Of a stretch of 64,000 bases of DNA, positions 32,939 to 62,642 are shown piece by piece. Position numbers and translations under genes: made by a program. The DNA lies in IMG/VR virus record IMGVR_UViG_3300008117_000011, positions 159,672 through 223,671 of that record. One strand, written 5' to 3'. Under the pieces are notes generated by a model, which had not been told where the DNA came from, ran no database searches, and saw only the letters and a program-made list of their open reading frames with translations. Each line of letters begins with the position of its first letter. The first letter of the stretch is position 1.

Positions 32939-34182
32939 AAATTACCAACTATTCTTTCTCCCCAACCTTTTGATGCCGAGTGTGGCCATACAACCCAATA
33001 CGCTGGTTTTTCTGAGGTGTTAAATTCTCTCCATATTTTTCCGTAACCATCTGGATCATTTTTTATTCTATTAATTTCATCTGGTTGTGCGTCTTGCCTA
33101 AATAGGGTTTCATCATTTTTATTATGAAACGCAACAACAAAGAAATTATAATCTGTTTCCGGAACCTTATCTAATGGCAAATCAATACAATGTTTGAATA
33201 TTGTAAAGAAACTTTTTTCCCAATCCTCTTCTGTTGAAAAATCGTATGGGTTTGGTGGATACTTTTTATCTAATGTATATTGTTGTACTGACCTATTTGA
33301 AAACTTTATTCCGGCGTACTTTTCATAGTCCTTAATTGTTCTTTCAGAACCAAATCCATACTTACCAAGGTCTTCTTCATATTTCTCATTATCAATACCA
33401 AGTATCTTTCTATTCTTTTCGTGTGATGAATTATTTTTCTTCCACCATTCTTTATTGTCATCCCATTGTTTTGTTCTGTTCTTTCTGGTGTACTCGTGCC
33501 AGATAACAACTTTATGTGGGTGAAACAAATCATATCCGTGAGTAAATGCCCTAACGGCAATTGATATTTCTTCTCCGTGAAAATAATAATCCGGGTCGTG
33601 CTGAACTTCCGTTGAGAATTGTCCTAACGTGAAACAAAAATGTGCCGAGTAAAATCTAGCCCTTAATGGTTTTTTAATTTTTTGCCACCCTGGGATTACC
33701 TCTGGTAGAAAAAATACAACTCCTTCCGGTGTGAATCTATCAAAGGCCATTCTCCAAGGTTCACCAACTCTACCAGCCGGGTCGTTGTCCGGATCAAAAG
33801 ATGAAACATAACCTGTAAGTAATGGTTTTTTAACTCCATCTTTTTGTAATCCTTGTAACATTCTGATTAAGATTTGATCCCAGTTTTTCTCAAAACGCAT
33901 GTGGGAATCAACTTGAAGAGTATACTCTTCTCCTTTATATAATTGTTGTACCTGGTTTCTAGCCCAACAAACACCTGTTGATTCTGAATATAAGACATCT
34001 AAAATTCTAAATCTTTCATCATCTTTATATTCCGATAAATCATCAAAACCATCTTCTGGATGATACTGACGACAAATACCAAAAACTAAATTTTCTGGGT
34101 GTTTTGCGTTTGATAAACAATCTTTAACTGTTGGGATAAGTTGGGGGTCTCTATATGATGCAATTTGTATAAAAATCTTCAT
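32935..34182 (-). CDS. GT60-family polypeptide GlcNAc transferase (Skp1 Gnt1-like)
   Basis: IFIQIASYRD, GVCWAR, LQVDSHMRF..WD, FHGEE, RAFTHGYD, WHEY. Confidence 0.8.
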   Translation of the reverse strand: MKIFIQIASYRDPQLIPTVKDCLSNAKHPENLVFGICRQYHPEDGFDDLSEYKDDERFRILDVLYSESTGVCWARNQVQQLYKGEEYTLQVDSHMRFEKNWDQILIRMLQGLQKDGVKKPLLTGYVSSFDPDNDPAGRVGEPWRMAFDRFTPEGVVFFLPEVIPGWQKIKKPLRARFYSAHFCFTLGQFSTEVQHDPDYYFHGEEISIAVRAFTHGYDLFHPHKVVIWHEYTRKNRTKQWDDNKEWWKKNNSSHEKNRKILGIDNEKYEEDLGKYGFGSERTIKDYEKYAGIKFSNRSVQQYTLDKKYPPNPYDFSTEEDWEKSFFTIFKHCIDLPLDKVPETDYNFFVVAFHNKNDETLFRQDAQPDEINRIKNDPDGYGKIWREFNTSEKPAYWVVWPHSASKGWGERIVGNL

Positions 34183-34281: not shown

Positions 34282-36414
34282 TTGATAACTTTAATGAAAA
34301 AATTAATGATAATAACACCCCATTTGTCAACAGGGGGTCAACCACAATTCTTATTAAAAAAGATTGAATTATTAAAAGATACGTACGACTTATACTGTGT
34401 TGAATATAACTTTGTGTCTCCAGATTTTGTTGTACAAAGAAATAAAATAAAAAATTTATTAATACTTAATTTTATCTCATTAGAAGAAAATGAATTGAGA
34501 TTGACAAATGTTATTAAGGATATAAATCCAGATATAATTTGGTTTGAGGAGTTACCAGAAACGTTTATAACAAACGAAGAATGTGAGTACATTTATAAAA
34601 AAGAAAGAAGTTGGCAAATAATTGAAACGACCCATTCCTCCCAAGATTTAAGTTTTAAAAAAAGATACGCTCCGGATAAATTTATTTTTGTATCCGATTT
34701 ATCAGTTAAACAATACGACAATTTAGGAATTGAATCTTCAGTAATTCAATACCCAGTAAACAAGAAAACAAAAAATACTGACAACTTTAAAAGTAAGTTA
34801 TCATTTGATAATGAGTATAAACATATTGTAATTGTTGGGTTATTTACCCAGGGTAAAAATCAATCGTATGCTTTTGATATTGCAAGAAAATTAGAAAAAG
34901 AAAAAGTATTATTTCACTTTGTTGGTAATACTGCAATCAATTTTAAAGACTACTGGGAACCACTACTTTTAAATAAACCTAAAAATTGTATACTACACGG
35001 AGAAAAAGAAAATATTGATGATTATTTACAAGCTTCTGATTTATTTTTATTTCCCTCAAAATTTGAATTAAATCCTTTGGTTGTTAAAGAAGCTCTTTGT
35101 TATGATGAGTTACCTATTGTTATGTTTAATTTAGAATCATATTGTGGTCAGTATGATAATGAACCTAACATTAGTTTTATGAAAAATGACATTAATATTG
35201 ATTCAAAACTAATTAAAGAATTACTTTTTGGTAAAACCAAGACCTATCAAGATATTGAGGGTTGGTTTTCATATGAAGAACTATACAATAAATTTGTAAA
35301 CGAATGTTCTGATGGAAGTACAATTGTTGAAATTGGTAGTTGGTTTGGTAAATCAACAAAATACATTTCAGATAAAATAAAAGAAACAAATAAAAATGTT
35401 AAGTTAATTTCTGTTGATACTTTTAAAGGGTCTCAAAATGAGCAACTCCATATAGATACTGTTGGTAATTTTGATAATGACATATATCAAATTTTCTATG
35501 AAAATTTAATTGGTAATAAAATAGAAGTAATAAAAGACTCTTCACATAACGCTTCTAAATTATTTAACAATGGGTCCATTGATTATCTAATGATTGATGG
35601 GGATCATAGTTATGAAGGTGTTAAAAATGATATTGAAGATTTTTTCTACAAAGTTAAACCGGGTGGTATTATTTCAGGTGATGATTATGTAGTCTTTGAT
35701 GGTGTAACAAAAGCTGTAAATGAGTATTTTAATGGGACTCAAAATATAACAACAAACGGATATAACTGGTATTATAAAATACCTAAAATTCAAGTAATTC
35801 ATATTTCAACATTACCTAAGCAAAAAAGGGCTATAAAATCAATTACAAATATAAAAGAGTTAAAGAGATACAACATTGATATTAAGTTTATTGAGAATTA
35901 TGTATATGATGGTGAAGTTGATGTATCAACCCACAGATATCCAGAAAGTCAAAATATAAATAAGGGTCACTATGGTTGTTATTTAGCACACAAAGAGGCA
36001 ATACATTCAATTGATAATGACTATGACTATACAATTATAATGGAGGAGGACGCTTACATTTTTGAGAATCTTAATGATTTTGTTGATATAGTTCATAAAG
36101 CCATTTTTAATTGTATTAAAGATGAAATATACTTTGTATCATTTGGTGGATTAATTTTAGATTACGCACTAAACGAATATGATAATTTATTTAATGAGTG
36201 TTGGCATCAAACTATGGCTCATTGTTATATGATACCAAACAAGTATAAACAATGGTACGTTGATAAATTTGAGACTAGCCCTTGGGATTCGGCAGATCTT
36301 TGGTTTAACCATATTTTTTGTCACGATAGAAAATTAAGATTAATAACCAAAAAATTCTATAGTAAACAACTAGATGGTACCTCACTTATTGATAATGTAA
36401 AAAAAGAATATTGA
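34282..36414 (+). CDS. Multidomain GT4 glycosyltransferase + class I methyltransferase + GT25-like domain
   Basis: GKNQ, DLFLFPSKFELNPLVVKEA (GT4); VEIGSWFGKS, IDGDHSYE, GGIISGDDY (methyltransferase); GCYLAH, IMEEDA (GT25-like). Confidence 0.8.
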   Translation: MITLMKKLMIITPHLSTGGQPQFLLKKIELLKDTYDLYCVEYNFVSPDFVVQRNKIKNLLILNFISLEENELRLTNVIKDINPDIIWFEELPETFITNEECEYIYKKERSWQIIETTHSSQDLSFKKRYAPDKFIFVSDLSVKQYDNLGIESSVIQYPVNKKTKNTDNFKSKLSFDNEYKHIVIVGLFTQGKNQSYAFDIARKLEKEKVLFHFVGNTAINFKDYWEPLLLNKPKNCILHGEKENIDDYLQASDLFLFPSKFELNPLVVKEALCYDELPIVMFNLESYCGQYDNEPNISFMKNDINIDSKLIKELLFGKTKTYQDIEGWFSYEELYNKFVNECSDGSTIVEIGSWFGKSTKYISDKIKETNKNVKLISVDTFKGSQNEQLHIDTVGNFDNDIYQIFYENLIGNKIEVIKDSSHNASKLFNNGSIDYLMIDGDHSYEGVKNDIEDFFYKVKPGGIISGDDYVVFDGVTKAVNEYFNGTQNITTNGYNWYYKIPKIQVIHISTLPKQKRAIKSITNIKELKRYNIDIKFIENYVYDGEVDVSTHRYPESQNINKGHYGCYLAHKEAIHSIDNDYDYTIIMEEDAYIFENLNDFVDIVHKAIFNCIKDEIYFVSFGGLILDYALNEYDNLFNECWHQTMAHCYMIPNKYKQWYVDKFETSPWDSADLWFNHIFCHDRKLRLITKKFYSKQLDGTSLIDNVKKEY

Positions 36415-36415
36415 T

Positions 36416-38233
36416 ATGAATTCACAAATATTTAAAGAAACAATCATTTCGGAAATAGAAAAAACAAATTTAACAAATAATAAAATTGGTGATATTTTAA
36501 AATTTATTTACACACAAATAAATGGTGCCTTTTTAGAAATAAAAGGTAATGTTGATAAAAATTTTAATGTTAGTTTTGAGGATGACCAGGGAAATATAGT
36601 TTATCAAACTGAATTAAAAACTGATATGTGGTCAAGACTAAATGCTAAGTATTTTAAAAATTATACAATAAAAATACAAAATGATGATTACTATAATGAA
36701 ATAAAAACCGATTTAAAAGATAAAAGAATTTATATAACTCTTGAGTCTAAATCATTAGGTGATACTTTGGCCTGGGTTCCTTATGTTGATGAATTTAGAA
36801 AAAAACATAGTTGTGATATAGTCCTATCAACATTTATGAATGATTTATTTAAGGAGCAATATCCGGAGATAGAATTTGTAGAACCAGGTACTTCTGTAGA
36901 TAATATATTTGGTATGTTTAATATCGGATGGTTTTATAATCAAAATGACGAAATTGATTACAGTAGACACCCAAATAATTTTAGAACTCAACCATTACAA
37001 AAAACGGCTTCAGATATTTTAGGTCTTGACTATGAAGAAATAAGACCAAAATTAAAACTAAAAGAAAATGTTAAAAAAGAAAAAAAAGTAGGTATTGCAA
37101 TACACGGAACCGCCCAAAGTAAGTATTGGAATAACCCAACTGGTTGGCAAGAGGTTGTTGATTATCTAATTAAACTTGGATATGAAGTTGTTTTATATTC
37201 TGTTGAGCCGGATGGTTATATGGGTAATTTTCATCCTACTGGAATTAAAAATTTCCCAAGAAGTCCATTACAAGAAGTAATTTACGATTTGCAAAGTTGT
37301 GAATTTTTTATTGGTATTGGATCTGGTCTTTCTTGGTTAGCCTGGAGTGTTGGTTTACCAACTATTTTAATATCCGGCTTTAGTGAGGAGTACACCGAAA
37401 CAAAATCAAATACTTATCGTGTTATAAATAATAATGTGTGTACCGGGTGTTTTAATTCCCATAGATTAAATCCTAGTGACTGGAATTGGTGTCCTATTCA
37501 TAAAAACACTGAAAGACAATTTGAATGTAGTAAATCAATAAATTCTAAATTAGTTATTAGTAAAATAAAACAAATTGGTTTTAACTGGGGTTTTTTTGAT
37601 TCAGACCAAAACTTTAAAAAACTAGTTGAGGAAGAATTATTTGTTAATAATATATATGAAAAGTATTTTAATATAAAAGATGGGGATATCGTAATGGATA
37701 TTGGTGCTAGTGTTGGTCCTTTTGTAAAATCATTATGTGATAGAAAATTAAAAAAGGTTTACGCTATTGAACCTAGTAAAACGGAGTTTAATATATTAGA
37801 AGAAAATATTAGTAATAAAAATGTTGTTTTAGTAAATAAAGCAATTGGTAATACAAATCAAACAAATTGTCAACTTGATGAAGTATATGGAGATGATAAG
37901 AGTGTTGACTATATTACTTTTGATAAATTATTAGAAGATTATAAAATTGATAAGATAGATTTTTTAAAATTAGATTGTGAAGGTGGTGAGTATGATATAT
38001 TCACAAATGAAAATTTAAAATTTTTAAAACAAATACCAAAAATAGTTGGTGAGTGGCATTTAAATGACCCAACAAAAAAAGAAAAATTTTTTAAATTTAA
38101 AAATGAAATTTTGTCAAACTTTTCTAAATTTACAATAAATTCAGTTGATGGTTACGATATAACACAAAGACTAAACGATCAAAATTTTATAGAGTATTAT
38201 AGTGAGATTTTAATCTACATTGAAAATAATTAA
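36416..38233 (+). CDS. TibC/Aah-like autotransporter O-heptosyltransferase fused to an FkbM methyltransferase
   Basis: SLGDTLAWVPY, QPLQ, KYWNN..GW, FIGIGSGLSWLAW, LISGFS, four-Cys site CTGC..WCP..FECSKSI; C-terminal DIGASVG, IEP, KLDCEGGE. Confidence 0.85.
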   Translation: MNSQIFKETIISEIEKTNLTNNKIGDILKFIYTQINGAFLEIKGNVDKNFNVSFEDDQGNIVYQTELKTDMWSRLNAKYFKNYTIKIQNDDYYNEIKTDLKDKRIYITLESKSLGDTLAWVPYVDEFRKKHSCDIVLSTFMNDLFKEQYPEIEFVEPGTSVDNIFGMFNIGWFYNQNDEIDYSRHPNNFRTQPLQKTASDILGLDYEEIRPKLKLKENVKKEKKVGIAIHGTAQSKYWNNPTGWQEVVDYLIKLGYEVVLYSVEPDGYMGNFHPTGIKNFPRSPLQEVIYDLQSCEFFIGIGSGLSWLAWSVGLPTILISGFSEEYTETKSNTYRVINNNVCTGCFNSHRLNPSDWNWCPIHKNTERQFECSKSINSKLVISKIKQIGFNWGFFDSDQNFKKLVEEELFVNNIYEKYFNIKDGDIVMDIGASVGPFVKSLCDRKLKKVYAIEPSKTEFNILEENISNKNVVLVNKAIGNTNQTNCQLDEVYGDDKSVDYITFDKLLEDYKIDKIDFLKLDCEGGEYDIFTNENLKFLKQIPKIVGEWHLNDPTKKEKFFKFKNEILSNFSKFTINSVDGYDITQRLNDQNFIEYYSEILIYIENN

Positions 38234-38490
38234 ATTACGTTTAGTAATTCTTTCACTTTATTATTAACATCATCATCAGTCCAATTGCCAATGTTGATAT
38301 AATCTTGACCCTCCCATAAAGTTAAAATCCGACTAAGACCTGTTGTACTAAAAAAGGATATCCTAGCTACAACCTTTTCTCCATCATCACTAACAGTGTC
38401 AATACTGATTTTATCGGTTAATAATGTTGTCTCTTCTCTTGTAATAACAATCACCGATTGTTCACTACTTAATTGTATTTCTCTTCCCAT
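38230..38490 (-). CDS. Small hypothetical protein, possibly fibre-associated
   Basis: 86 aa directly downstream of the collagen-like fibre; LWEG..Y..IGNWTD. Confidence 0.5.
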   Translation of the reverse strand: MGREIQLSSEQSVIVITREETTLLTDKISIDTVSDDGEKVVARISFFSTTGLSRILTLWEGQDYINIGNWTDDDVNNKVKELLNVI

Positions 38491-38501
38491 AATTTAATTT
38501 T

Positions 38502-41500
38502 TTATCCTACCCAAGTTAACTTAACATAACTGTTCCACCAGAACGTAGTTGGTGCTGCATTTGTAGTATTTTGAGCACCCTGAACGCTTACAGTTACCGT
38601 TGTTACCGGCGCTAGAGTACCTTTTATTGTATAAATACCAGCTCCAGCTGTATTTGTTGCAAATTCTGAACCAGCAAATATAGTTCCTCCGGCGGCAATT
38701 TGATTATTTTCGTATAAACCATTACCAACACTATAATTACTTCCTAGGTCAATTCTACCCCAGGTTCCAGAAACTGTTAGTAATCTTAATCTTGCACCAC
38801 CAGCACCAGCTGTTACCCTACCATATAGTTCAATTTCATATATTGACCCAGCGTTAAGAACAAACGTCATACTAGGTAAATCAACAAATGTGTTATTAGT
38901 GAACGCTAAATCATTAGTTTGTCTAATAAAATCACCATAAAAAACTTTATGTCTAGCATCACTATTTGTTGTATATAGTTGATTACTATTATATTCTATC
39001 GTACCAGCCTCTGGTGTTGTATTTAATGTACCATTAGTAAATTTAAGAGGTGCAGTTCCAGCGGTTGCAGCTCCAGCTCCTAAATGTAGTTTTGCTGTTG
39101 GTGTTCCTTGTGTAATCCCAATAGCATTGGCGGACGCGTCTAAAAAAAACATATTTGTTTGCGTGTCTGACTCAATTCTAAAATCTGAATTAGCATCCCC
39201 CACTTCATTAAATATACTACTACCCTGAGTTGATCTGTATGCAATATTAGTGGTTCCAATAGAGGCTATCGCTTCAAATGCGATATTAGTTGCAGTCCCA
39301 TTAACAGAAGAATCAACCCCAATTGATGTACCACCAACAGAATCTGCGGAAGCTCTAAGACCAAATGTTTGCCCATTGGATGCATTTGATCTTCCGACCA
39401 GTAATCCACTTGATGGTCCTCCCGCCGCAGCAACACTTGATTGGTTAACAATACTATAAGGGTTTGCAAACGTTGTTGTTAAAAGCGAAGCGTTCCCTAT
39501 AAGATCAAGATTAAATGATGGTGTTGTATTTATACCTAGTTGCGTCCCATTAAATATTAAATTTGCTTCGCCTTGTAGTGTATTTGCCGTTCCGGTTGCT
39601 GTTACTACATAGTCATTTACGTTATTGTTTATAATAACACTAGCACCAGATGTCCCAGAAGAACCCCCACTACCTGCAGTACCAGAAGTACCATTAACTC
39701 CAGATGTTCCAGAAGTACCATTAACTCCAGATGTTCCAGAGGATCCACCACTCCCACTAGTACCTCTAGTGCCACTTGTCCCAGAAGAACCTCCACTACC
39801 CGCAGTACCACTCGTTCCATTTATTCCAGAAGTTCCAGAAGTTCCATTAACGCCAGAAGTCCCACTCGTTCCATTTATTCCACTAGTTCCACCACTACCC
39901 GCGGTACCTGATGTACCGTTAATACCAGAGGTTCCACCACTACCAGAAGTCCCTCTAGTACCACTTGTACCACCACTACCTGCGGTACCACTCGTTCCAT
40001 TTATTCCAGAAGTTCCACTCGTTCCATTTATCCCACTAGTACCAGAAGTTCCTGAAGAACCTCCGCTACCTGCAGTACCACTCGTTCCATTTATTCCAGA
40101 AGTTCCATTTATTCCACTTGTACCTCCACTACCAGAAGTACCATTTATTCCACTTGATCCTCCACTGCCAGAAGTTCCAGAGGTACCATTTATACCGGAA
40201 GTACCACTCGTTCCGTTAATACCAGAAGTCCCAGAAGTTCCACTCGTTCCGTTAATACCAGAAGTCCCAGAAGTTCCACCACTACCAGAAGTCCCTCTAG
40301 TACCACTCGTACCACTTGTTCCGTTAACACCAGAAGTTCCATTTGTTCCATTAATGCCAGATGTCCCTGAAGTTCCATTAATACCAGATGTCCCTGAAGA
40401 ACCACCACTACCAGAAGTCCCAGAAGTTCCAGAAGACCCCCCACTACCAGCAGTACCACTCGTTCCATTTATTCCCCCACTACCAGCAGTACCACTCGTT
40501 CCGTTTATTCCAGACGTGCCAGAAGTTCCTGAAGAACCTCCGCTACCGGATGTTCCATTAGTCCCATTTATTCCACTAGTTCCTGAAGTACCCCCACTAC
40601 CAGAAGTTCCACTTGTACCACCACTGCCCGCTGTACCTGATGTGCCATTAATACCAGAAGTTCCTCCGCTACCTGCAGTCCCACTCGTTCCGTTTATTCC
40701 AGACGTGCCAGAAGTTCCTGAAGTTCCTGAAGAACCTCCGCTACCGGATGTTCCATTAGTCCCAGAAGAACCACTTGTTCCGGATGTCCCATCAATTCCA
40801 CTAGTACCAGAAGTTCCGTTAACACCAGAAGTACCACTAGTCCCATCAATTCCACTAGTACCAGAAGTTCCGTTAACACCAGAAGTACCATTGGTTCCGG
40901 AAGACCCTCCACTACCGCTTGTCCCATTAGTTCCAGAAGATCCGCTAGTTCCATCAACACCACTAGTACCAGAGGTTCCATCAACACCACTAGTACCAGA
41001 GGTTCCATCAACACCACTAGTACCAGAAGTTCCGTCAACACCACTAGTACCAGAAGTTCCATTTGTTCCAGAAGTTCCATTAACACCACTAGTTCCAGAA
41101 GTTCCATTAACACCACTAGTTCCAGAAGTTCCATTAACACCACTAGTTCCAGAAGTTCCATCTACCCCACTAGTACCTGATGTACCGTCAATTCCACTGG
41201 TACCAGAAGTTCCGTTAGTACCTGATGTACCGCTAATACCATTGGTACCAGACGTTCCATCAATTCCAGAGGTTCCATTTATACCGCTTGTACCAGAAGA
41301 GCCATCTACGCCACTTGTTCCAGAAGTTCCATCTACCCCACTAGTACCGGAAGTTCCATCTACCCCACTAGTACCGGAAGTTCCATTTGTTCCAGAAGTA
41401 CCCCAGAGGTTCCACTTGTACCAGAAGTACCATCAATACCACTAGTACCAGAAGTTCCATCAATACCACTAGTACCGGATGTTCCGTCAATACCACTAGT

Positions 41501-41869
41501 ACCATCAATTCCAGAGGTCCCAGAGGTTCCGTCAATCCCTGATGTACCAGAAGTGCCGTCTATACCAGAGGTTCCGTCTACCCCACTAGTGCCAGATGTA
41601 CCATCAATACCTGATGTTCCAGAAGTACCATCAACACCAGAAGTACCAGAAGTTCCGTCTATACCAGAGGTCCCAGAGGTGCCTGCGGTTCCAGAAGTTC
41701 CACTTGAACCAAAAGTTGTTGATATATAGTTTGCAACTTGATCTATTGTTGCCTTATATGAAGAACCCCCTGAATATTGTATTGTATCACCGGTATTTAC
41801 GATGTGAATTAATGTATCACCAGTTATATATGGGGCAATTGTTCTATCTGTTAATCTTTGTTGTGACAT
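38502..41869 (-). CDS. Gly-Thr-Ser collagen-like fibre protein (~1121 aa if repaired), frame broken at 41401-41404
   Basis: ORF 41360..41869 leaves the GTS frame at a CCCC run; the other frame continues through the repeat into SGASVIINNNVNDYVVTATG..GEANLIF..FNEVGDANSDFRIESD and ORF 38502..39203; removing 2 nt gives 1122 codons. Confidence 0.8.
39645..41710 (-). repeat. ~2.06 kb coding Gly-X-Y repeat (GTS, GSS, GIN, GVN, GID, GVD, GTA, GTR), about 230 triplets
   Basis: 9 nt periodicity (gttccagaa / gtaccacta variants) with synonymous divergence. Confidence 0.92.
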
Positions 41870-42216: not shown

Positions 42217-45174
42217 TTAAACGTCATCTAACCAAGATAAAGATACTTGAGCACCAGTATTGTTACCACCAGTTGCAATTATAGATACAGTTTCACCTGG
42301 ATTTATAAAAATTTCATAATTAGAAATATCAATAGTGTTACTATCCGTTTTATTTAAAATTGTTTTATATGCGGATCTACCAGTTCCTGCAGTGTAAGTC
42401 CCGTCAATAGCCGCTTGTACAGGTGAATTTACACTTACTGATGTATATGTTGGTGCCACTGAAAACGTACCATTTTTAACTAAATTAAATGTTATAGTAC
42501 TTACACCATCTGTTACAAGTGTTAATGTTTTAATAAGTGCAATTGTTTTATTTGGTACACCATTAAATGTTAGTGGGTTTGATAATGATATCATACTTTT
42601 ATTTGCCGTTGCACCAGGACTACCGTCTGCCGAATAATTGACACCATTATATATAATTATACCCTCAACAAACGCAGCCATTGATGCGTTTTTTATTGAA
42701 ACTGCGGTATTATTTGTTGTGTTTTGTGATATAAAACTAATTGGAAATGTTGGGTTAATTAAACTTGGTGATGTGTTTTGATTTGCAAATTTAATTTGAT
42801 GTGCCGGTGAAAAAAGACCTGTGGTCGCACTTTCAATATTAAATTGAATGGCCCCAAATCCTAACCATTGTACAACAATTTCATATACATTTCCTTTTGT
42901 TGGATCTAATAATACCCCACTTGGATTACTAGGGTTTGGTGAACTTTGTGTTGATGACCCATCAAATTTGTCAATGTTCCAAGAAGTTTGAGGAATAAAT
43001 TCATCGGTTCCTTGAAATCTTCTCATAACACCAAATGATGTCCCACTATATCCAATAAAAAATCCATTTGTGTTATCACCCCATCCAGCCCACTGAGTGT
43101 TTCCTGTAGCACCACTTGTAAATAAACAAGTAAATCTAATGTTTAATCCTTGACCATTTCTATATTTTGCTAGTTTTACAGTTCTTAATTGACCTGTGTT
43201 ATTAGTTGCTGCCGCTGTTGAGATGTTTACAAAAGTATTACCACTTTCGTAAGTAACGGTTCCACCAGTTGTAAAACCTGTTGTTATTAAATCAGTATTA
43301 ATACCGTATGGGTGTGTAATTTGAATAAGTGGTGACATTTCAGCAACTTGTAGTTCACCAAAAGCAGTTAATGGTTCGTCAATTTGAACTTTTAAGTGAC
43401 CCTCTTCATCAACACCAACGTTTCTAAAATTAAACCCCTCATCTTGACCCAATAGAATGTTTCTACCTAAGTTCGCTAAAACCTCTGGTGGTACTGGTGA
43501 GTTTGTTGAAAGTAAAAAACCACTTAAAGGTTTTATAAGTAATTTAGTATCAAAATAAAAATCCGTTTGATTTGTTGATGATGTATTTGTAAATTCTAAT
43601 TTAGCGTATGGTGAAAGTGCTGGTGATGAAAATGTTTGTAGTCCAGCGCCAGCTACATACATCACCATAGATGTCCTTAATAAATCAGTCCCAGCAGAAT
43701 CACTATAAAAATAAACGGTCAATATACCATCTGTATCTGAAAGAATTGATGTTTGTTGTTGTGAAAAATCTGGTGAAAGAGCAAAAACTGATGATGTATA
43801 TGTTTGACCAGACAACAATGGTGTTGTTGTTTTAAAAGCAAAACCATCTTGTCTAGTGTTAGCATAAGTACCATCAGGTTGAACCCCAGCTGTAATATTT
43901 CTACCCAAGTTTGCAACCATACCAGATGCAATTGGTGCAGTTAAATTAAGTACTTGACCATTAATTGATTTTGTTGTGAATTTTGTATCAAAATAAAAAT
44001 CGGTTTGTCCTGTTGCTGAGGTATTCTCAAAAGTATATTTTATGTAAGGAGCAAATGCTGGTGCACCAAACATTTGAAAACCATCAGTCGCCGCGTAAGG
44101 TAAACTTAGTGTTCTTATTTGGTCAGTACCAGCAGAATCAGAATACCAAAACACTCTTAATGTACCTGCTTGGTCTGCTCTTACGTGTGTTTGAACTTGT
44201 GAAAACCCAGGTGATAGTGCTAAAACCCCTGAGTCATATGTTTGACCTGAAGCTAAAGGCGTTGTGGTTAAAAACGCATAACCATCTGTTTTAACATTTT
44301 CATAACTACCGTCAGGTTCTTGACCAACAATAACATTCCTTCCTAAGTTTGCTACCATACCTGCCGCTATAGGGGCTGCCAAATTTAAAACTTGTCCATT
44401 AATTGATTTTGTTGTGAATTTTGTATCAAAATAAAAATCAGTTTGACCAGTTGCTGAAGTGTTTTCAAAAGTATATTTTATGTAAGGAGCAAAAGCCGGA
44501 GCCCCAAACATTTGGAACCCGTCAGTTGCCGCGTACGGTAAAGTTAGAACCCTTATTTCATCTGTACCCGCAGAATCAGAATACCAAAACACTCTTAATG
44601 TACCTGCCTGATCCGCTCTTACGTGGGTTTGAACTTGTGAATAACCGGGAGATAAAGCTAAAACACCTGAGTTAAAAGTTTGACCTGAACCCAAAGGTGT
44701 TGTTGTTAAAAATCCATACCCATCTGCTTTTAAGTTATCATAATTACCATCAGGGTCCTCACCAATTATAACAGATTTTGTAACATTTGCATCCCAATCT
44801 GTTTGTAATGAACCACTAAGATTTGAAGTTAGTGCTTCAAAATCACCTGCGGTTGTTTGTAATCTAATAAAAGTTTGGTTAGAATTACTTGTATTTGTAA
44901 ATCTAACCCTTGCATATTGTCTTGTAATAGTTATTCTGTGTACCTCATTTGTATTAGCACTTACGGACCAAGATATTGTGCTATCAGTATTTACACCATC
45001 TGGTGAAAAATCTAAAAATAATGTACCATTTTGATCTGTAAGAACCGCCATAACTATAGCGGAATATCTTTCAACGTCTACATATGTTCCGGTAAATGTT
45101 GTGCCCGACAATAATGGTGTTGTTGTTGAATTTGTGTCTAATACTTTATTTACTATTTGTGGTATAAAAGCCAT
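42217..45174 (-). CDS. Virion/fibre protein with tandem ~146 aa domains
   Basis: Unit TTTPLxSGQT..FYFDTK..ANLGRN repeats at 438 nt spacing (44581 vs 44143). Confidence 0.65.
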   Translation of the reverse strand: MAFIPQIVNKVLDTNSTTTPLLSGTTFTGTYVDVERYSAIVMAVLTDQNGTLFLDFSPDGVNTDSTISWSVSANTNEVHRITITRQYARVRFTNTSNSNQTFIRLQTTAGDFEALTSNLSGSLQTDWDANVTKSVIIGEDPDGNYDNLKADGYGFLTTTPLGSGQTFNSGVLALSPGYSQVQTHVRADQAGTLRVFWYSDSAGTDEIRVLTLPYAATDGFQMFGAPAFAPYIKYTFENTSATGQTDFYFDTKFTTKSINGQVLNLAAPIAAGMVANLGRNVIVGQEPDGSYENVKTDGYAFLTTTPLASGQTYDSGVLALSPGFSQVQTHVRADQAGTLRVFWYSDSAGTDQIRTLSLPYAATDGFQMFGAPAFAPYIKYTFENTSATGQTDFYFDTKFTTKSINGQVLNLTAPIASGMVANLGRNITAGVQPDGTYANTRQDGFAFKTTTPLLSGQTYTSSVFALSPDFSQQQTSILSDTDGILTVYFYSDSAGTDLLRTSMVMYVAGAGLQTFSSPALSPYAKLEFTNTSSTNQTDFYFDTKLLIKPLSGFLLSTNSPVPPEVLANLGRNILLGQDEGFNFRNVGVDEEGHLKVQIDEPLTAFGELQVAEMSPLIQITHPYGINTDLITTGFTTGGTVTYESGNTFVNISTAAATNNTGQLRTVKLAKYRNGQGLNIRFTCLFTSGATGNTQWAGWGDNTNGFFIGYSGTSFGVMRRFQGTDEFIPQTSWNIDKFDGSSTQSSPNPSNPSGVLLDPTKGNVYEIVVQWLGFGAIQFNIESATTGLFSPAHQIKFANQNTSPSLINPTFPISFISQNTTNNTAVSIKNASMAAFVEGIIIYNGVNYSADGSPGATANKSMISLSNPLTFNGVPNKTIALIKTLTLVTDGVSTITFNLVKNGTFSVAPTYTSVSVNSPVQAAIDGTYTAGTGRSAYKTILNKTDSNTIDISNYEIFINPGETVSIIATGGNNTGAQVSLSWLDDV

Positions 45175-45201
45175 AACCTTTTTAATTTAAATATTTTAAT
45201 G

Positions 45202-48153
45202 TTACATTTGTAACCAAGTTCCTGTTCCTGTATTAAATAATATAATTGCACCTCCATCGGCATCTAATATTAGTGTTTGTGTGTTTTCAACTCCAATAAT
45301 TGTGTCTGTACCATTTGCAATAAATGTTATATTATTAATATATGAGTTTAACCCAATGTCTTTAACATCATACCTTAATCTACCAGATGTAACAGAATTA
45401 GGTAAATAAATTGTAGTTGCTGATATTGAAGAGTCAACACCAATAACATTGTCGGTTGTAAGGGCTGAATATGTGGCGCCGCTAACATAGGTGTAGTTAT
45501 TTCCAATAGTATTAACATTTCTATACTCAACCACACCAGTTGTTTCATTTCTCCCTAAAATTTGTGTTAAATTGTTATTAAGGTTTGGTATATCTGATAT
45601 TGTAATGGTGTTAGCGGTAAACCCATTTTGTACAACTGTTCCACCAGTAACAATTAAATCACCATCATATACTAAATCACCAACAACAACGACATCCCCC
45701 ACAACATCTAAATTACCATTAATACAAGTATTTCCTGTTACAGATAAAGTACACCCTGTTGTGTGTCCAGAAATATTGAATGACCCAATTTGGTTTGTGT
45801 TTCCTGTTACATTATAGTTACCAATCTGTGTTGTATTACCAGAAATTGTATAATTACCATTTAATGTTTTTGTATATTCCCAATATCCTTGTGATGAATT
45901 ATATGATATTAAATCACCATTTGTTTGACCACTAGTTTGAACATTGTGTAAATCACCTAAGTTATATCCTAATGATGGTCTGACAAATAGTGAACCATTA
46001 ACAGCAGCATCAATAACAATAGCCATTTGGATTTTAAGGTTTGGTTCAGTAGGTTCAAAACTAGTTAACCCACCAGGTATTGTTGGACTTACATAAAGTA
46101 TCGTACCATCAACCCAGGTTTCACCATATAGTGAACCTGTAGTGTTTACCCCCCTAATTAAGCCAAATTCATAAACATAACCATCTTCACCATTTAATAT
46201 GTTTTCCCCAGCAATACCTAATGTAAAATAGTATGGAATAGTACCATCTGCAATCATATACTCACCAAGTATTCTACCACTAGTACCAAGAGTACCAGAC
46301 GCTCTGACAACCCTACCTTTATTTATTGTCGCACCACTTTGGTTTTTAATATAATATAGATTGTCTAAACCAACTTTAAGGCTTACGTTATTTCCTTCTA
46401 AATCAACATCAAGTGTTCCATAATCAACATCCCAATGAAGCCTACCTTCTTGTACTGTTGGTACGTATGCGGTATTAAAATCAATGTAATTTGTATATAC
46501 TGATGTTGCGGATAATGAATTAAATTTTGAATCCCCCGATGCGGTAATCCAAGCAGTTTCAACACCCGCATTGTTCTCAACGATAATATTTTTATCATTA
46601 TCATTTCCAGTACCACCTTTAAATTGAACCCCCCCTAATATTGAATTTGTTGTAATTTCAGGTGATGTTGAATTATTATATGCTTGTTGTAAATTTGTTG
46701 TGGATGTTCCACCAAACTTAGACGCAAAAAAGAATTTAGCCTTAGTTTCGTCAGTTAAATCAGTTGCCGTACTTAATACAGATAAAACACCTATAAGAAC
46801 AGCATCGGTACTTAAATTAGGGAATGATATAAATGATTCATTTTGTAATGCTGAAATTGCTAATGCTAGTGTATTGTAATTTTGTTGACCATACATTACC
46901 ACAACTGAACCATCTTGTTGTAAGTAAATTCTTTGATTTGTTGCCTTTGTTCCTGTTATTGGTGTAATAACACCACCAAGGTCATAATTTAAAGGGTCAA
47001 TATCTGTTACATCTGTCAATGTCGCCCCTGTTTGTGTTCTATATTGAAATGTTCTAGGGTTTTCTCCTGTAACGTAAATAGTGTTTGGACTTAAAGTATT
47101 ATTTGCAAAATTAATACCTAACCCATATAGATAGCCAGCACTTGTATTAAACTTTAAATTAGCCCCATTTGTTGATGGTAGTATACCTCCATTAATTAAA
47201 TTAATAGGTGTGAACATATCTCGTAATTGACCCAATGGGGATAAAACAAAATCAGGTTGACTAAATACTGAATAAATTGATGTTTTATCTGGGTGGCTTA
47301 ATTTACCTAAAAATATATTTTGTCTTCTTTGTTGTTCCGATAAAGGTGTTGATTGTTGTGATATTGTACCACCACTATTTAAAAAAACAAATGTTTCAGT
47401 GGAAGTGTTAACAAAATTATCTGTGTTTACCCCACCACTATAAGATAAATAATATATTTGTGGACTTAAAGGGTTTGATGTGTCATCAACAATCCACCCT
47501 TTAACTGGTGATACATAAAATGTTGTTGTTGATGCTGTTGTAATACCTGTAAATTCAAACACACCTGTTGATGAGTTTACCGTAGATATATTATATCCTA
47601 AAGCTACCCAATCAGAACCATTACTAACCAATTGTAACGCATTTGTTTCACCAAGTATCACAAATGGTTTATCATCTATTGTTTCTGAACCAAAAGGTTG
47701 TACTGTTACAGCGCCTCCTCCATTATTTTTAATATTATATAATTTACCTTGTACACCTACCGCAGTTGGTAAATATATTGTAAAAGTTCCACCAGAAGCA
47801 TCTATCATAAAATCTTCTGTTTGTGCTGTATACGTTGAATTAATTGTCTTCTGTGGAAATATAATACCACCAGTTGATGTAATACCACTAGTTTGTGTTA
47901 AACCACTAACAAATAATGTATCGGCTGATAGACCATTTGTAAAAATTGTAGGACCGTAAACAGTTCCTCCGGATAATGTTGATAATCTATCCCACCCTAT
48001 TGGGAGTATTTGATTTGCTGTTGATCCTGATGTATATAAAATTGCATCAGCTGTATTAAGTGCTAATTCACCAGATGTTAGTCCACTTGCGGGTGGAACT
48101 TTTCCTGGGACATTAGACCTTTTAATAAGGAATGTCGTTTGTCTATTTGCCAT
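45202..48153 (-). CDS. Tail fibre-like protein, 983 aa
   Basis: N-terminal IKRSNVPGKVP..LTSGELALNTAD fibre motif; TNLQQAY; GNLDVVGD-type repeats; two IYLP..IK..TI..W modules. Confidence 0.65.
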   Translation of the reverse strand: MANRQTTFLIKRSNVPGKVPPASGLTSGELALNTADAILYTSGSTANQILPIGWDRLSTLSGGTVYGPTIFTNGLSADTLFVSGLTQTSGITSTGGIIFPQKTINSTYTAQTEDFMIDASGGTFTIYLPTAVGVQGKLYNIKNNGGGAVTVQPFGSETIDDKPFVILGETNALQLVSNGSDWVALGYNISTVNSSTGVFEFTGITTASTTTFYVSPVKGWIVDDTSNPLSPQIYYLSYSGGVNTDNFVNTSTETFVFLNSGGTISQQSTPLSEQQRRQNIFLGKLSHPDKTSIYSVFSQPDFVLSPLGQLRDMFTPINLINGGILPSTNGANLKFNTSAGYLYGLGINFANNTLSPNTIYVTGENPRTFQYRTQTGATLTDVTDIDPLNYDLGGVITPITGTKATNQRIYLQQDGSVVVMYGQQNYNTLALAISALQNESFISFPNLSTDAVLIGVLSVLSTATDLTDETKAKFFFASKFGGTSTTNLQQAYNNSTSPEITTNSILGGVQFKGGTGNDNDKNIIVENNAGVETAWITASGDSKFNSLSATSVYTNYIDFNTAYVPTVQEGRLHWDVDYGTLDVDLEGNNVSLKVGLDNLYYIKNQSGATINKGRVVRASGTLGTSGRILGEYMIADGTIPYYFTLGIAGENILNGEDGYVYEFGLIRGVNTTGSLYGETWVDGTILYVSPTIPGGLTSFEPTEPNLKIQMAIVIDAAVNGSLFVRPSLGYNLGDLHNVQTSGQTNGDLISYNSSQGYWEYTKTLNGNYTISGNTTQIGNYNVTGNTNQIGSFNISGHTTGCTLSVTGNTCINGNLDVVGDVVVVGDLVYDGDLIVTGGTVVQNGFTANTITISDIPNLNNNLTQILGRNETTGVVEYRNVNTIGNNYTYVSGATYSALTTDNVIGVDSSISATTIYLPNSVTSGRLRYDVKDIGLNSYINNITFIANGTDTIIGVENTQTLILDADGGAIILFNTGTGTWLQM

Positions 48154-56259: not shown

Positions 56260-56282
56260 TTAATGGTAAATTGTATAAAATT

Positions 56283-57497: not shown

Positions 57498-57500
57498 TTT

Positions 57501-58202
57501 ATGATTACCATTCCAATTACTAAAATTTTATTTCTTGACATTGAGACTGTTGGTGGCTGTCCAGACTATGAATCTTGTCAAAGATTTAACCCAGAAATAT
57601 CTGACCAATTTGAAAAATACTTTGATTGGTTTCAAAAAAGATTTCCGGAAGACTTAGGTCTCTCAAAAGATGAGGTATTTGTTAAAAGAGCTGCACTTGT
57701 TCCGGAGTTCGCTAAAATTGTTTGTGTATCAATGGCTTTTGTGTTAGACAATGGAGAAGTAAAAAAACAAACCTTTTCAAGTGAAGACGAAAAAGAATTA
57801 TTAACACAAGTAAGAGCCCTTCTTGATAGATGTCATAAACTTGATTTCTATCTTTGTGGTCATAATTTAAAAAACTTTGACATTCCAATGCTTGCAAAAA
57901 GGATGATTATCAATGGAATTATGCCATCAAAAATCCTTCCATCTTACGATACAAAACCCTGGGAAGTAAAAGCAATTGACACAAAAGAAATCTGGCAGTA
58001 TGGTGCTTATTCATCTGTTGGCTCACTTGACTTAATGTGTTCTTGTCTTGGTATACCAACACCAAAAGATGGTGAGGTTTCAGGTGCTAATGTTCACAAA
58101 TCATATTGGGAAGAAAGAAAAATAAAAGAAATATCTGAATATTGTGAAAAGGATGTTGAGGTATTAGTTGAAGCTATAAAAAAATTAAAGGATTTAAAAT
58201 GA
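57501..58202 (+). CDS. PolB-like 3'-5' exonuclease (RNase H fold)
   Basis: FLDIET, GHNLKNFDIP, YCEKDV. Confidence 0.85.
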   Translation: MITIPITKILFLDIETVGGCPDYESCQRFNPEISDQFEKYFDWFQKRFPEDLGLSKDEVFVKRAALVPEFAKIVCVSMAFVLDNGEVKKQTFSSEDEKELLTQVRALLDRCHKLDFYLCGHNLKNFDIPMLAKRMIINGIMPSKILPSYDTKPWEVKAIDTKEIWQYGAYSSVGSLDLMCSCLGIPTPKDGEVSGANVHKSYWEERKIKEISEYCEKDVEVLVEAIKKLKDLK

Positions 58203-60282: not shown

Positions 60283-60283
60283 T

Positions 60284-62545: not shown

Positions 62546-62642
62546 ATTAAATATGAATTTATCTGACGACACTGTTCCTATTAAGTAGGAAGACCACTTA
62601 AAAGATTGTATAAAAAAGGTTTAAAATTTAATATTAAAGTAT

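What the first reader, a model, noticed from the sequence alone, without database searches (positions are those of the whole stretch)
39645..41710. Proline-free collagen-like fibre built from Gly-Thr-Ser, with visible expansion history
Seen: Gly at every third residue for about 690 aa, with X/Y mostly Thr, Ser, Ile, Val, Asn and Asp and no Pro noticed. Sub-blocks shift from GID/GVD near the N-terminus to GIN/GSS/GTA/GTR near the C-terminus, and 27 nt units are exactly repeated around 40950-41160. Inference: a triple helix of roughly 200 nm (at ~0.29 nm per residue) that may need Thr/Ser glycosylation for stability, as established for glycosylated Thr in vent-worm cuticle collagen. A polyglycine-II bundle is an alternative fold.
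Basis: partly seen in the sequence, partly recalled or inferred. Interest (0 to 1): 0.6.

Follow-up and report, generated by a model that had tools for sequence, protein, structure and literature searches.

The report
Proline-free collagen-like phage fibre
An uncultured jumbo phage encodes a roughly 200-nm collagen-like fibre built almost only of Gly-Thr-Ser triplets with no proline; the gene lies beside a TibC-type protein glycosyltransferase gene, so the fibre is probably sugar-coated, and this fibre type is common in uncultured phages but uncharacterised in the literature I could search.

Summary
It lies on the minus strand (ATG 41869, stop 38502). There are 231 Gly-X-Y triplets at 41710-39639, with no proline, and 53% of them are GTS. 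An otherwise identical contig (L003) carries the intact 1163-aa gene with 244 uninterrupted triplets.

The protein has a 53-aa N-terminal adaptor and a collagen-like rod of about 200 nm. After the rod come a conserved neck, a beta-rich shaft and a TNF/C1q-like head (Z 10.7). It sits in the fibre gene cluster of a jumbo myophage.

The fibre is not unique. At least 292 viral contig stretches encode GTS/GSS collagens, with up to 974 triplets and 0.24% Pro.

The main new result concerns the neighbouring gene, 36416-38233. It is an Aah/TibC-family protein O-heptosyltransferase fused to an FkbM methyltransferase (TIGR04414, 288 bits against a cut-off of 200; catalytic Asp and four iron-finger Cys conserved). 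TibC-like genes in phage contigs lie within 10 kb of a collagen-like gene in 33 of 51 loci, against 2 of 80 control loci.

The best reading is a trimeric, probably O-glycosylated collagen-like fibre. Neither the triple helix nor the glycosylation was tested directly.

The parts
41711..41869 (-). N-terminal non-collagen domain (53 aa), the presumed virion-attachment adaptor. It carries an R[IL]TD...[LI][YI]IV...motif shared with other GTS fibres.
   Evidence: Translation. The same motif is seen in L011, L047 and L075.
39639..41710 (-). Gly-X-Y repeat: 231 triplets in this assembly and 244 in the intact copy L003, with no Pro. Proposed collagen-like triple-helical rod of about 200 nm.
   Evidence: Pfam PF01391 E 2.8e-65.
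41396..41404 (-). Frame break. This assembly lacks 70 nt that are present in L003, and the junction shows only 1 nt of microhomology.
40025..40035 (-). Site where this assembly has two fewer exact 27-nt units (54 nt, in frame) than L003.
39534..39638 (-). Post-collagen neck (INNNVNDYV.TATGTA... motif). It is conserved (68% identity) in GTS fibres that otherwise have a different C-terminal domain.
38934..39251 (-). Beta-rich shaft module (DFR.ESDT..N..F.DAS..A.GI...PTA.LH.GAG.A.AGTAPLKF...). The module is repeated up to 18 times in other long fibre proteins.
   Evidence: Moderate pLDDT.
38502..38948 (-). C-terminal TNF/C1q-like jelly-roll head (148 aa plus the stop codon), the presumed trimerising receptor-binding tip.
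   Evidence: AF2 pLDDT above 90. VIA Z 10.7 to 9ib6, 9.7 to 4jdn, 8.3 to 8ke9, 7.6 to BclA 1wck. Foldseek hits.
38230..38490 (-). 86-aa ORF immediately downstream of the fibre gene. It matches no family. A fibre chaperone role is possible but unsupported.
36416..38233 (+). Aah/TibC-family protein O-heptosyltransferase domain (aa ~49-387) fused to an FkbM methyltransferase (aa ~426-560). The gene is convergent with the fibre operon.
   Evidence: TIGR04414 287.9 bits against a cut-off of 200. The only PDB hits are TibC 4rb4/4rap, E 3.9e-56, with the catalytic Asp and four Cys conserved. Pfam hits.
34282..36414 (+). Three-domain enzyme: GT1 (GT-B) domain, Methyltransf_24 domain and a weak GT25-like domain.
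32935..34182 (-). PF11397 'GlcNAc' glycosyltransferase. From my own knowledge this corresponds to the CAZy GT60 polypeptide alpha-GlcNAc transferase family.
   Evidence: Pfam E 2.6e-69 and phrog_24687 E 1e-164. Present in 5 of 5 records of this clade.
31304..32938 (-). HtrL/YibB-like protein, a family from LPS-core gene clusters. Its role is unknown.
42217..48153 (-). Two upstream fibre or virion genes in the same transcription direction: a 985-aa protein (phrog_1645, virion structural) and a 983-aa protein (tail-fibre PHROGs).

Best explanation
The gene encodes a homotrimeric collagen-like fibre of an uncultured jumbo myophage. Three chains are brought into register by the C-terminal TNF/C1q-like head and the conserved neck. 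The 231-244 uninterrupted Gly-X-Y triplets then zip into a triple-helical rod about 200 nm long and about 1.5 nm thick. The 53-aa N-terminal adaptor fixes the rod to the virion, most likely at the tail or baseplate. The lectin-like head contacts the host surface. The rod has no proline and almost no charge pairs. It is therefore probably held together by its length, by beta-branched Thr/Ile/Val in X, by hydroxyl and water networks, and by dense O-glycosylation of Ser/Thr. The proposed enzymes are phage-encoded and cytoplasmic: an Aah/TibC-type O-glycosyltransferase fused to a methyltransferase, a GT1-methyltransferase-GT25-like enzyme and a GT60-type polypeptide GlcNAc transferase, all encoded next to the fibre gene. 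Shown here: the sequence anatomy, the fold of the head, the family membership of the enzymes, and their synteny with collagen-like genes. Inferred: trimer and triple helix, glycosylation and its stabilising role, position on the virion. The copy in this window is frameshifted. An otherwise identical contig has it intact, so the break is either an assembly error or a deletion variant.
For: Anatomy and strict periodicity are shown. The gene belongs to a run of fibre and virion genes in a genome with tail sheath, tube and baseplate hub genes. The head has a TNF/C1q fold, with matches to trimeric lectins, cyanophage tail-fibre tips, C1q, BclA and collagen VIII NC1. The same C-domain occurs behind collagen repeats in many uncultured-phage proteins. 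132 GTS triplets are written with 36 different 9-mers, so the protein sequence is what is being maintained, not the DNA repeat. In LR756501.1 a 93-triplet GTS run is followed, after 2 residues, by a 163-triplet Pro-rich collagen run in one ORF. The neighbour meets NCBIfam's equivalog cut-off for Aah/TibC and keeps Asp110 and the four iron-finger Cys (residues taken from PMC4358343). The same domain and motif are present in all 7 GTS-collagen phage records examined, including the 735-kb phage. Pfam GT9 is found in 9 of 10 GTS-collagen records and in 0 of 5 control large phages. 33 of 51 TibC-anchored loci have a GXY gene within 10 kb (15 of 17 clusters), against 2 of 80 dUTPase-anchored control loci (p about 1e-15); several of these genes lie directly downstream on the same strand. 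GT60 enzymes make GlcNAc-alpha-O-Thr on mucin-like proteins (PMC9472816).
Against: There is no direct evidence for trimerisation, a triple helix or glycans. The complex prediction was not run by the tool and reads were unavailable. The N-terminal 140 residues of the C-domain fold poorly as a monomer (pLDDT about 40). Thr is in X and Ser in Y, which is the reverse of the GXT pattern of characterised bacterial collagens (PMC8968730). GT60 is absent from 5 other GTS-collagen phages, so that enzyme is not a general requirement. No ADP-heptose synthesis genes were found in the 224-kb record, so the donor sugar is unknown. The synteny counts come from related phages and are not independent events. 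The copy in this window is out of frame.
Confidence: 0.6

Rival explanations
1. The fibre is a collagen-like triple helix that needs no modification. The neighbouring transferases act on something else: host LPS or capsule, another virion protein, or DNA.
For: Pro-free Burkholderia Bucl proteins, including the GTS/GSS-type Bucl3, are predicted collagens with no known dedicated transferase (PMC4565658). GT60 is missing in 5 other GTS-collagen phages. In some genomes the TibC-like gene lies 40-190 kb from the collagen genes. The window has at least six more GT genes at 56-64 kb, which suggests a broader glycan programme.
Against: Aah/TibC enzymes are protein Ser O-glycosyltransferases that act on repetitive substrates encoded nearby (PMC4358343). 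The enrichment of collagen genes next to TibC-like genes is large: 33 of 51 against 2 of 80. The LPS heptosyltransferase model scores only 23 bits against a cut-off of 185.
Confidence: 0.2
2. The Gly-X-Y region is not a collagen triple helix. It forms a polyglycine-II bundle or another fold, or it is an extended, mucin-like glycosylated linker.
For: There is no proline and there are few stabilising charge pairs. No biophysical data exist for any GTS-type sequence in the literature I could search. Ser/Thr-rich regions are typical O-glycosylated disordered linkers.
Against: There are 244 (up to 642 in relatives) consecutive triplets without a single phase break. A PGII bundle needs turns, and a disordered linker needs no Gly at every third residue. 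X and Y compositions are sharply different family-wide: X is T/I/S/V and Y is S/D/N over 16,328 triplets. The run is fused in one chain to canonical Pro-rich collagen runs in another phage. A trimer-type C1q/TNF head follows the run.
Confidence: 0.07
3. The protein is a collagen-like fibre, but a head, neck or whisker decoration used for adhesion or sensing, not a tail fibre that binds the receptor. This rival concerns location only and is compatible with the main mechanism.
For: The tail sheath, tube and hub module lies 20 kb away at 11-18 kb. The PHROG tail-fibre hits are driven by the GXY repeat. Some PHROG hits are labelled 'head and packaging virion structural protein'.
Against: The adjacent 983-aa gene hits tail-fibre PHROGs outside any GXY repeat. 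The head resembles solved cyanophage tail-fibre tips (8ke9, 9k09). The alternative C-terminal module of the L011-type fibres is shared with proteins annotated as tail fibre-like in a Flavobacterium phage and with proteins in baseplate regions of cyanophages.
Confidence: 0.2
4. In this particular genome the gene is a real pseudogene or deletion variant, not an assembly error. This rival concerns the status of the window copy only.
For: The 70-nt gap has only 1 nt of microhomology and is not a multiple of the repeat unit, which is atypical for repeat collapse. A third contig of the same phage has a different frameshifting 121-nt deletion in the non-repetitive C-domain.
Against: All other 12,665 compared bases are identical to the intact copy. 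Short-read assemblies commonly fail in such repeats: many contigs end inside them.
Confidence: 0.3

Closest known systems
BclA, exosporium collagen-like glycoprotein of Bacillus anthracis/cereus
   Same: Short N-terminal anchoring domain, collagen-like region of variable length, and a C1q/TNF-like trimeric C-terminal domain (VIA Z 7.6 to 1wck). The collagen-like region is O-glycosylated, and the glycosylation is thought to help hydration (PMC8968730).
   Different: BclA triplets are GPT-type, with Pro in X and Thr in Y. Here Pro is absent, Thr is in X and Ser in Y. The rod is several times longer. A shaft of about 230 aa lies between the rod and the head. The candidate transferases belong to the Aah/TibC and GT60 families. 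The host particle is a phage, not a spore.
Burkholderia Bucl3 (GTS/GSS collagen-like protein)
   Same: A Pro-free collagen-like region dominated by GTS and GSS, an N-terminal part of 44 aa and a C-terminal part of 372-405 aa, with length polymorphism between strains (PMC4565658).
   Different: Bucl3 has 38-63 triplets against 231-244 here. It is a chromosomal bacterial gene with a signal sequence.
Prophage collagen-like tail-fibre proteins of E. coli O157 (EPclA)
   Same: Phage tail-fibre context, a collagen domain flanked by trimerisation modules, and a triple helix shown by CD (PMC3368898).
   Different: In EPclA Pro occupies about half of the X positions and charged pairs are abundant. The domain is short, no glycosylation was seen, and Tm is 42 C.
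TibA/TibC and AIDA-I/Aah (autotransporter hyperglycosylation)
   Same: A cytoplasmic Aah/TibC-family enzyme encoded next to a long repetitive Ser-rich protein. The window enzyme passes the TIGR04414 cut-off and keeps the catalytic Asp and the iron-finger Cys.
   Different: The known substrates are beta-helical autotransporter passenger domains of Enterobacteria. Here the candidate substrate is a collagen-like phage fibre. The enzyme is fused to an FkbM methyltransferase, or in relatives to a GT1 domain. The sugar donor is unknown.
Giant-virus collagen-like proteins with virus-encoded modification (L230) and the chlorovirus A064R GT-GT-methyltransferase
   Same: A virus encodes both a collagen-like virion protein and the enzymes that glycosylate it. 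Multidomain GT plus methyltransferase enzymes build virion glycans (PMC9614988).
   Different: L230 hydroxylates and glucosylates Lys. The hosts are eukaryotes. There is no sequence relationship to the enzymes here.
Riftia (vent-worm) cuticle collagen
   Same: Galactosylated Thr replaces hydroxyproline as a stabiliser.
   Different: There Thr is in Y within Gly-Pro-Thr. Here Thr is in X, Ser is in Y and there is no Pro.

Membership tests
Collagen-like proteins (Pfam PF01391, bacterial/viral collagen) | Gly at every third residue over a long uninterrupted stretch | tested here: met
   231 triplets in the window across one frameshift, and 244 uninterrupted triplets in L003.
Collagen-like proteins (Pfam PF01391, bacterial/viral collagen) | Score above the family's gathering threshold | tested here: met
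   216.4 bits against 27.2.
Collagen-like proteins (Pfam PF01391, bacterial/viral collagen) | Flanking trimerisation or registration domain | tested here: inconclusive
   The head has the TNF/C1q fold typical of obligate trimers. The oligomeric state was not modelled, because complex prediction did not fold the chain.
Collagen-like proteins (Pfam PF01391, bacterial/viral collagen) | Formation of a triple helix (CD, cooperative melt, protease resistance) | not testable with these tools
   Needs recombinant protein.
Collagen-like proteins (Pfam PF01391, bacterial/viral collagen) | Usual composition of characterised bacterial members: Pro frequent in X, Thr in Y. This is typical of the family, not strictly defining. 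| tested here: not met
   Pro is 0; X is mostly Thr and Y mostly Ser. Typical values are in PMC8968730.
Phage tail fibres | Similarity to tail-fibre families, and location among tail-fibre and virion genes of a tailed phage | tested here: met
   phrog_5073 E 2e-62 and others, although these hits are repeat-driven. The neighbours hit tail-fibre and virion PHROGs. Sheath, tube and hub genes are in the window. The head resembles solved cyanophage fibre tips.
Phage tail fibres | Presence in the virion at the baseplate and a role in adsorption | not testable with these tools
   The phage is uncultured and the host is unknown.
BclA-type glycosylated collagen-like surface fibres | C1q/TNF-like C-terminal domain directly organising the collagen region | tested here: inconclusive
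   The fold is present (Z 7.6 to 1wck), but it is separated from the rod by a neck and shaft of about 230 aa.
BclA-type glycosylated collagen-like surface fibres | GXT triplets carrying O-glycans on Thr in Y | tested here: not met
   Thr is in X. Y is Ser, Asn or Asp. Glycans are not testable.
Aah/TibC autotransporter O-heptosyltransferases (BAHT); applies to the neighbour at 36416-38233 | Sequence membership above the curated equivalog cut-off | tested here: met
   TIGR04414 287.9 bits against 200. TibC is the only PDB hit, E 3.9e-56, over TibC residues 48-380.
Aah/TibC autotransporter O-heptosyltransferases (BAHT); applies to the neighbour at 36416-38233 | Catalytic Asp (TibC D110) and four iron-finger Cys (C339, C342, C358, C370) | tested here: met
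   The alignment shows Asp at the D110 column and CxxC...WCP...FEC. The residue list comes from PMC4358343.
Aah/TibC autotransporter O-heptosyltransferases (BAHT); applies to the neighbour at 36416-38233 | Substrate is a repetitive Ser-rich protein encoded nearby | tested here: inconclusive
   The synteny with GTS/GSS collagen genes is strong: 33 of 51 against 2 of 80. No autotransporter is present. Enzyme activity on the fibre is untested.
Aah/TibC autotransporter O-heptosyltransferases (BAHT); applies to the neighbour at 36416-38233 | Uses ADP-heptose | tested here: inconclusive
   There is no gmhA or rfaE-domain II in the 224-kb record, which is 76% complete. The host could supply the sugar, or the donor may differ.
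Polyglycine-II bundle proteins (snow-flea antifreeze, phage gp38-type adhesin tips) | Short Gly-rich PGII strands joined by turns that break the triplet phase | tested here: not met
   There is no phase break in 244 triplets, or in up to 642 triplets in relatives. The description of the family is from my own knowledge.

The most novel reading that the evidence does not exclude
GTS/GSS collagens of large phages form a distinct class of 'glyco-collagen'. In this reading the proline-free triple helix folds or is stable only after dense cytoplasmic O-glycosylation of its Ser/Thr. The glycosylation would be done by a phage-encoded Aah/TibC-type enzyme, extended by fused GT1 and methyltransferase domains and, in this clade, by a GT60 enzyme. 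It would be the first substrate of the TibC family outside autotransporters, the first glycosylation-dependent collagen in a virus of bacteria, and a widespread case of virion glycosylation in environmental phages.
Probability: 0.3. Interest if true: 0.8.

Novelty: new variant of a known kind. Interest (0 to 1): 0.6.

Why it matters
Collagen stability is usually explained by proline and hydroxyproline or by charge pairs. Here a natural fibre family has 0-0.24% proline, and uninterrupted runs reach 642 triplets. It therefore offers a direct test of what else can hold a triple helix together. The conserved pairing with Aah/TibC-type protein glycosyltransferases gives a concrete pair to co-express. 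It would extend that enzyme family beyond autotransporter adhesins and add a probably common form of virion glycosylation in environmental jumbo phages.

There is also a practical side. These repeats break or mis-join metagenomic assemblies: contigs end inside them, a 'terminal repeat' lies inside one, and three different indels occur in three contigs of one phage. Fibre lengths and completeness calls for such phages should be treated with caution. A proline-free, hydroxylase-independent collagen could also interest biomaterials work.

Tried and rejected
Length polymorphism and the 70-nt deletion could therefore not be checked, and read laying was not used.
- Trimer modelling: complex prediction on three copies of P0037:726-1020 was not folded, because of a likeness filter.
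- Cultured relatives: megablast of the neighbouring fibre genes found nothing in the phage collection, and tblastn with the C-domain and with the rod found nothing either (the rod is masked as low complexity). Distant blastn of the repeat found only the 735-kb uncultured phage LR756501/LR756503. The DNA polymerase is at most 31% identical to that of any deposited phage, so the host remains unknown.
- Genome scans for the C-domain: the full alignment had no usable conserved stretch. The single protein found nothing. The shaft motif alone occurs in CPR bacteria, Bacteroidales, Niastella, Bdellovibrio and Omnitrophica MAGs, which shows a mobile fibre module but gives no host clue.
- Pfam and PDB sequence searches of the C-domain and of the N-terminal domain gave nothing.
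- The idea that GT60 is a general partner of GTS collagens was rejected: it is in 5 of 5 records of this clade but in 0 of 5 other GTS-collagen phages.
- A phage-encoded ADP-heptose pathway was not found.
- The plus-strand Pro-rich ORF 39625-41445 was rejected as the antisense reading of the repeat.
- No alternative genetic code or programmed frameshift was invoked, because the identical contig L003 is simply in frame.
- A quantitative Tm prediction was not attempted. I had no verified propensity table, and numbers from memory would be unreliable.
Full report
**Where the window lies**

The window is the last 64 kb of a 223,671-bp IMG/VR virus record that CheckV rates 76% complete. GC is 26-35% everywhere except over the finding, where it reaches 45%. 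The window encodes a tail sheath, tail tube, baseplate hub, family-B DNA polymerase and helicase. It is therefore part of a jumbo contractile-tailed phage. The polymerase is at most about 31% identical to that of any deposited phage, so the lineage is uncultured and the host unknown.

**Checking the observation**

The repeat is read on the minus strand. The gene starts at ATG 41869 and stops at 38502. In this assembly it falls into two frames: ORF A (41869-41360, 169 aa) and a stop-to-stop frame B (41432-38502, 976 aa). Gly occupies every third residue in A 54-158 and B 11-598, which corresponds to window 41710-39639 and 231 triplets.

The composition is extreme:
- GTS makes up 123 of 231 triplets. 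The rest are GIN, GSG, GSS, GID, GTA, GVD, GTN, GVN and GTR.
- X is Thr/Ser/Ile/Val and Y is Ser/Asn/Asp/Gly/Ala.
- There is no Pro, Glu, Lys or His.
- Asp-containing units (GTS-GTS-G[IV]D, 27 nt) fill the N-terminal 40%. Asn, GSG, GSS, GTA and GTR units fill the rest.

The 606-aa plus-strand ORF over the same DNA is the antisense reading of the repeat.

**The frameshift**

A separate IMG/VR contig (L003) is identical to the window at all 12,665 compared bases except for two gaps, both inside the repeat. The window lacks 70 nt at about 41402, which causes the frame break and shows only 1 nt of microhomology. It also lacks two exact 27-nt units at about 40031.

L003 encodes an intact 1163-aa protein (P0037): 53 aa, then 244 uninterrupted triplets, then 378 aa. 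A third contig of the same phage (L002) ends inside the repeat and carries a different frameshifting 121-nt deletion in the non-repetitive C-domain.

**What the protein is**

Pfam Collagen scores 216 bits. Many tail-fibre PHROGs match, though mainly through the repeat. The two genes upstream are a virion structural protein and a tail-fibre-like protein.

The 378-aa C-domain has no Pfam or PDB sequence match but has 4163 relatives in the representative library. Residues about 130-235 form a shaft module (...DAS..A.GI...PTA.LH.GAG...APLKF...) that recurs up to 18 times in long fibre proteins.

An AlphaFold model built on 22 homologues is confident (pLDDT above 90) for the last 140 residues or so. 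That part is a TNF/C1q-like jelly roll. Its structural matches are (Foldseek agrees):
- Z 10.7 to the trimeric lectin PLTL
- Z 9.7 to Pgp3
- Z 8.3-8.4 to cyanophage tail-fibre tips
- Z 8.2 to C1q
- Z 7.6 to BclA
- Z 7.0 to collagen VIII NC1

In the viral structure library the best matches are uncultured-phage proteins, many of them named 'Collagen triple helix repeat'. The architecture is thus adaptor, rod, neck, shaft and trimer-type head. At 0.29 nm per residue (value from PMC8968730), 231-244 triplets give about 200-210 nm.

**Is it a triple helix?**

This was not tested directly, and the trimer model was not run by the tool. The indirect evidence is as follows.
1. There is no phase break in 244 triplets, or in up to 642 triplets in relatives. 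A polyglycine-II bundle, which needs turns, would not show this. A disordered linker would have no need of it.
2. X and Y differ sharply across 65 distinct relatives and 16,328 triplets: X is T 63%, I 11%, S 10%, V 5%; Y is S 67%, D 16%, N 8%. These loci were selected by similarity to the query, which biases the composition.
3. 132 GTS triplets are written with 36 different 9-mers, so selection acts on the protein. Only a few units are recent duplicates.
4. In the 735-kb phage LR756501.1, GTS-type and GPT/GPQ-type collagen genes lie side by side. One ORF joins a 93-triplet GTS run to a 163-triplet Pro-rich run across only 2 residues.
5. A head of the C1q/TNF type ends the chain.

**How common the fibre is**

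A scan with the N-terminal 150 residues found at least 292 related stretches in viral contigs. Of the 79 loci fetched, 56 have no Pro at all in the GXY part. Proteins reach 3624 aa and 974 triplets. A sister lineage (L011, L012) has fibres of 1900-2059 aa with 521-574 GTS/GSS triplets and the same neck, but a different C-terminal module. That module is shared with cyanophage proteins and with a protein annotated as tail fibre-like in a Flavobacterium phage.

In the literature, Pro-free GTS/GSS collagen-like regions are described for Burkholderia Bucl3, which has 38-63 repeats and strikingly similar N- and C-terminal lengths (PMC4565658). I found no biophysical study of such sequences, and no paper that links collagen-like phage proteins to heptosyltransferases. 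That search covers only the held library.

**The neighbouring transferases**

Three transferase genes lie next to the fibre operon.
- 36416-38233 is convergent with the operon. Its first 400 residues or so pass NCBIfam's equivalog cut-off for 'autotransporter strand-loop-strand O-heptosyltransferase' (TIGR04414, 287.9 bits against 200), while the LPS heptosyltransferase I model reaches only 23 bits. The only PDB matches are TibC (E 3.9e-56, TibC residues 48-380). The alignment keeps the catalytic Asp110 and the four iron-finger cysteines (residues from PMC4358343). The C-terminal third is an FkbM methyltransferase.
- 34282-36414 combines GT1, Methyltransf_24 and a weak GT25-like domain.
- 32935-34182 is a PF11397 enzyme (E 2.6e-69). 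From my own knowledge this Pfam family corresponds to CAZy GT60. GT60 members make GlcNAc-alpha-O-Thr on mucin-like proteins (PMC9472816).

TibC and Aah hyperglycosylate Ser residues of repetitive proteins in the cytoplasm (PMC4358343), which is exactly what a GTS rod offers.

**Is the pairing more than adjacency?**

Four results say it is.
1. The same TibC-like domain, with the CxxC...WCP.HK...FEC motif, is present in all seven GTS-collagen phage records examined, including LR756501.1. It is usually fused to a GT1 domain.
2. Pfam GT9 is found in 9 of 10 such records; the exception is a 19% fragment. It is found in none of five control large phages (phiKZ, G, 201phi2-1, a Flavobacterium phage, S-SCSM1), which also lack the GTS pattern.
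3. Starting from the fibre, 21 of 79 loci have close GT9/GT1/FkbM homologues within 8 kb, although many contigs end in the repeat. In L011 the fibre gene is followed by FkbM, FkbM-GT1-TibC-like and GT9 genes.
4. Starting from the enzyme, 33 of 51 viral loci carry a GXY gene of at least 10 triplets within 10 kb (15 of 17 clusters at 70% identity). Nearly all are of the Pro-free GTS/GSS type, and several lie 50-80 nt downstream on the same strand. Among 80 control loci anchored on the dUTPase of the same phage clade, only 2 do (Fisher p about 1e-15).

The loci are related to one another, so this p-value overstates independence.

Three results count against generality. GT60 is confined to the window's clade: 5 of 5 records there but 0 of 5 elsewhere. 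No ADP-heptose genes were found in the record. In some genomes the enzyme and the fibre genes are far apart.

**Mechanism proposed**

The chains are glycosylated in the cytoplasm on Ser, and perhaps Thr, by the TibC-like enzyme. The glycans would be extended and methylated by the fused or neighbouring domains. This parallels the chlorovirus GT-GT-methyltransferase A064R and the mimivirus L230/collagen pair (PMC9614988). The TNF-like head and the neck trimerise and set the register. The rod zips up from the C-terminal end. The N-terminal adaptor docks on the virion, and the head binds a host surface ligand.

Shown here: domain anatomy, the head fold, the enzyme family and the synteny. Inferred: trimer, helix, glycans, direction of folding and site on the virion.

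**Verdict**

The triple-helix reading is likely, and the glycosylation idea is now backed by a specific enzyme family and a strong genomic association. The fibre type itself is widespread and annotated in databases as a collagen repeat, so it belongs to a known kind. Its proline-free Thr(X)/Ser(Y) chemistry, its length and its pairing with Aah/TibC-type enzymes make it an uncharacterised variant worth an experiment.

Noticed in passing
G001 = IMGVR_UViG_3300031951_000003 (loci L183, L184, L010): The 344-nt 'direct terminal repeat' of this 321-kb contig, which is rated 100% complete, lies wholly inside its GTS/GSS collagen gene. Both contig ends are in the repeat, so the fibre length there is unresolved and the repeat may be what closes the contig.
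   Followed up: yes
window 39224-39344 compared with L002; window ~41402 and ~40031 compared with L003: Three contigs of one phage are 100% identical over 8-12.6 kb. Each nevertheless carries a different indel state in the fibre gene, including a 121-nt frameshifting deletion in non-repetitive sequence. This could be an assembly artefact or real fibre-gene deletion variants.
   Followed up: partly
window 56271-63335 (+): A row of further glycosyltransferase genes: GT1-like, GT2-type (three), a GT7C-like gene, a GT11 (alpha-1,2-fucosyltransferase family) and a GT10-like gene. A PolB-type exonuclease and a dUTPase are interspersed. This is an unusually large glycan toolkit for a phage.
   Followed up: partly
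window 42217-45174 (-): The 985-aa virion protein contains three tandem copies of a domain of about 145 aa (...GQT[FY].SGVLALSPG.SQVQTHVRADQAGTLRVFWYSDSAGTD...), followed by a part matching phrog_1645.
   Followed up: no
whole window, upstream of start codons: Only 4 of 42 genes have a Shine-Dalgarno-like motif within 20 nt of the start. Many have an AT-rich TATTTATA-like box just upstream, including the fibre gene. This may be a promoter or a non-SD initiation signal, and it may hint at the type of host.
   Followed up: no
LR756501.1 392301-417227 (L123): The 735-kb uncultured phage carries at least three large collagen-like genes side by side. One is GTS-type with 827 triplets and a C-terminal module like that of L011. 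One is mixed GTS plus GPQ/GPT. One is a pure GPT/GPQ type with 257 triplets.
   Followed up: partly
L110-L120 (bacterial MAG contigs): The fibre shaft motif (PTA.LH.GAG...APLKF) also occurs in CPR bacteria, Bacteroidales, Niastella, Omnitrophica and Bdellovibrio MAGs. Foldseek also matched solved Bdellovibrio fibre proteins (8ond, 8okh), and VIA matched 8okw. The module appears to be shared between phage fibres and bacterial fibres.
   Followed up: no
window 31304-32938 (-): A 544-aa protein has an N-terminal HtrL/YibB-like domain, a family found in LPS-core gene clusters, next to the GT60 gene. Homologues accompany GT60 in L039 and L075.
   Followed up: no
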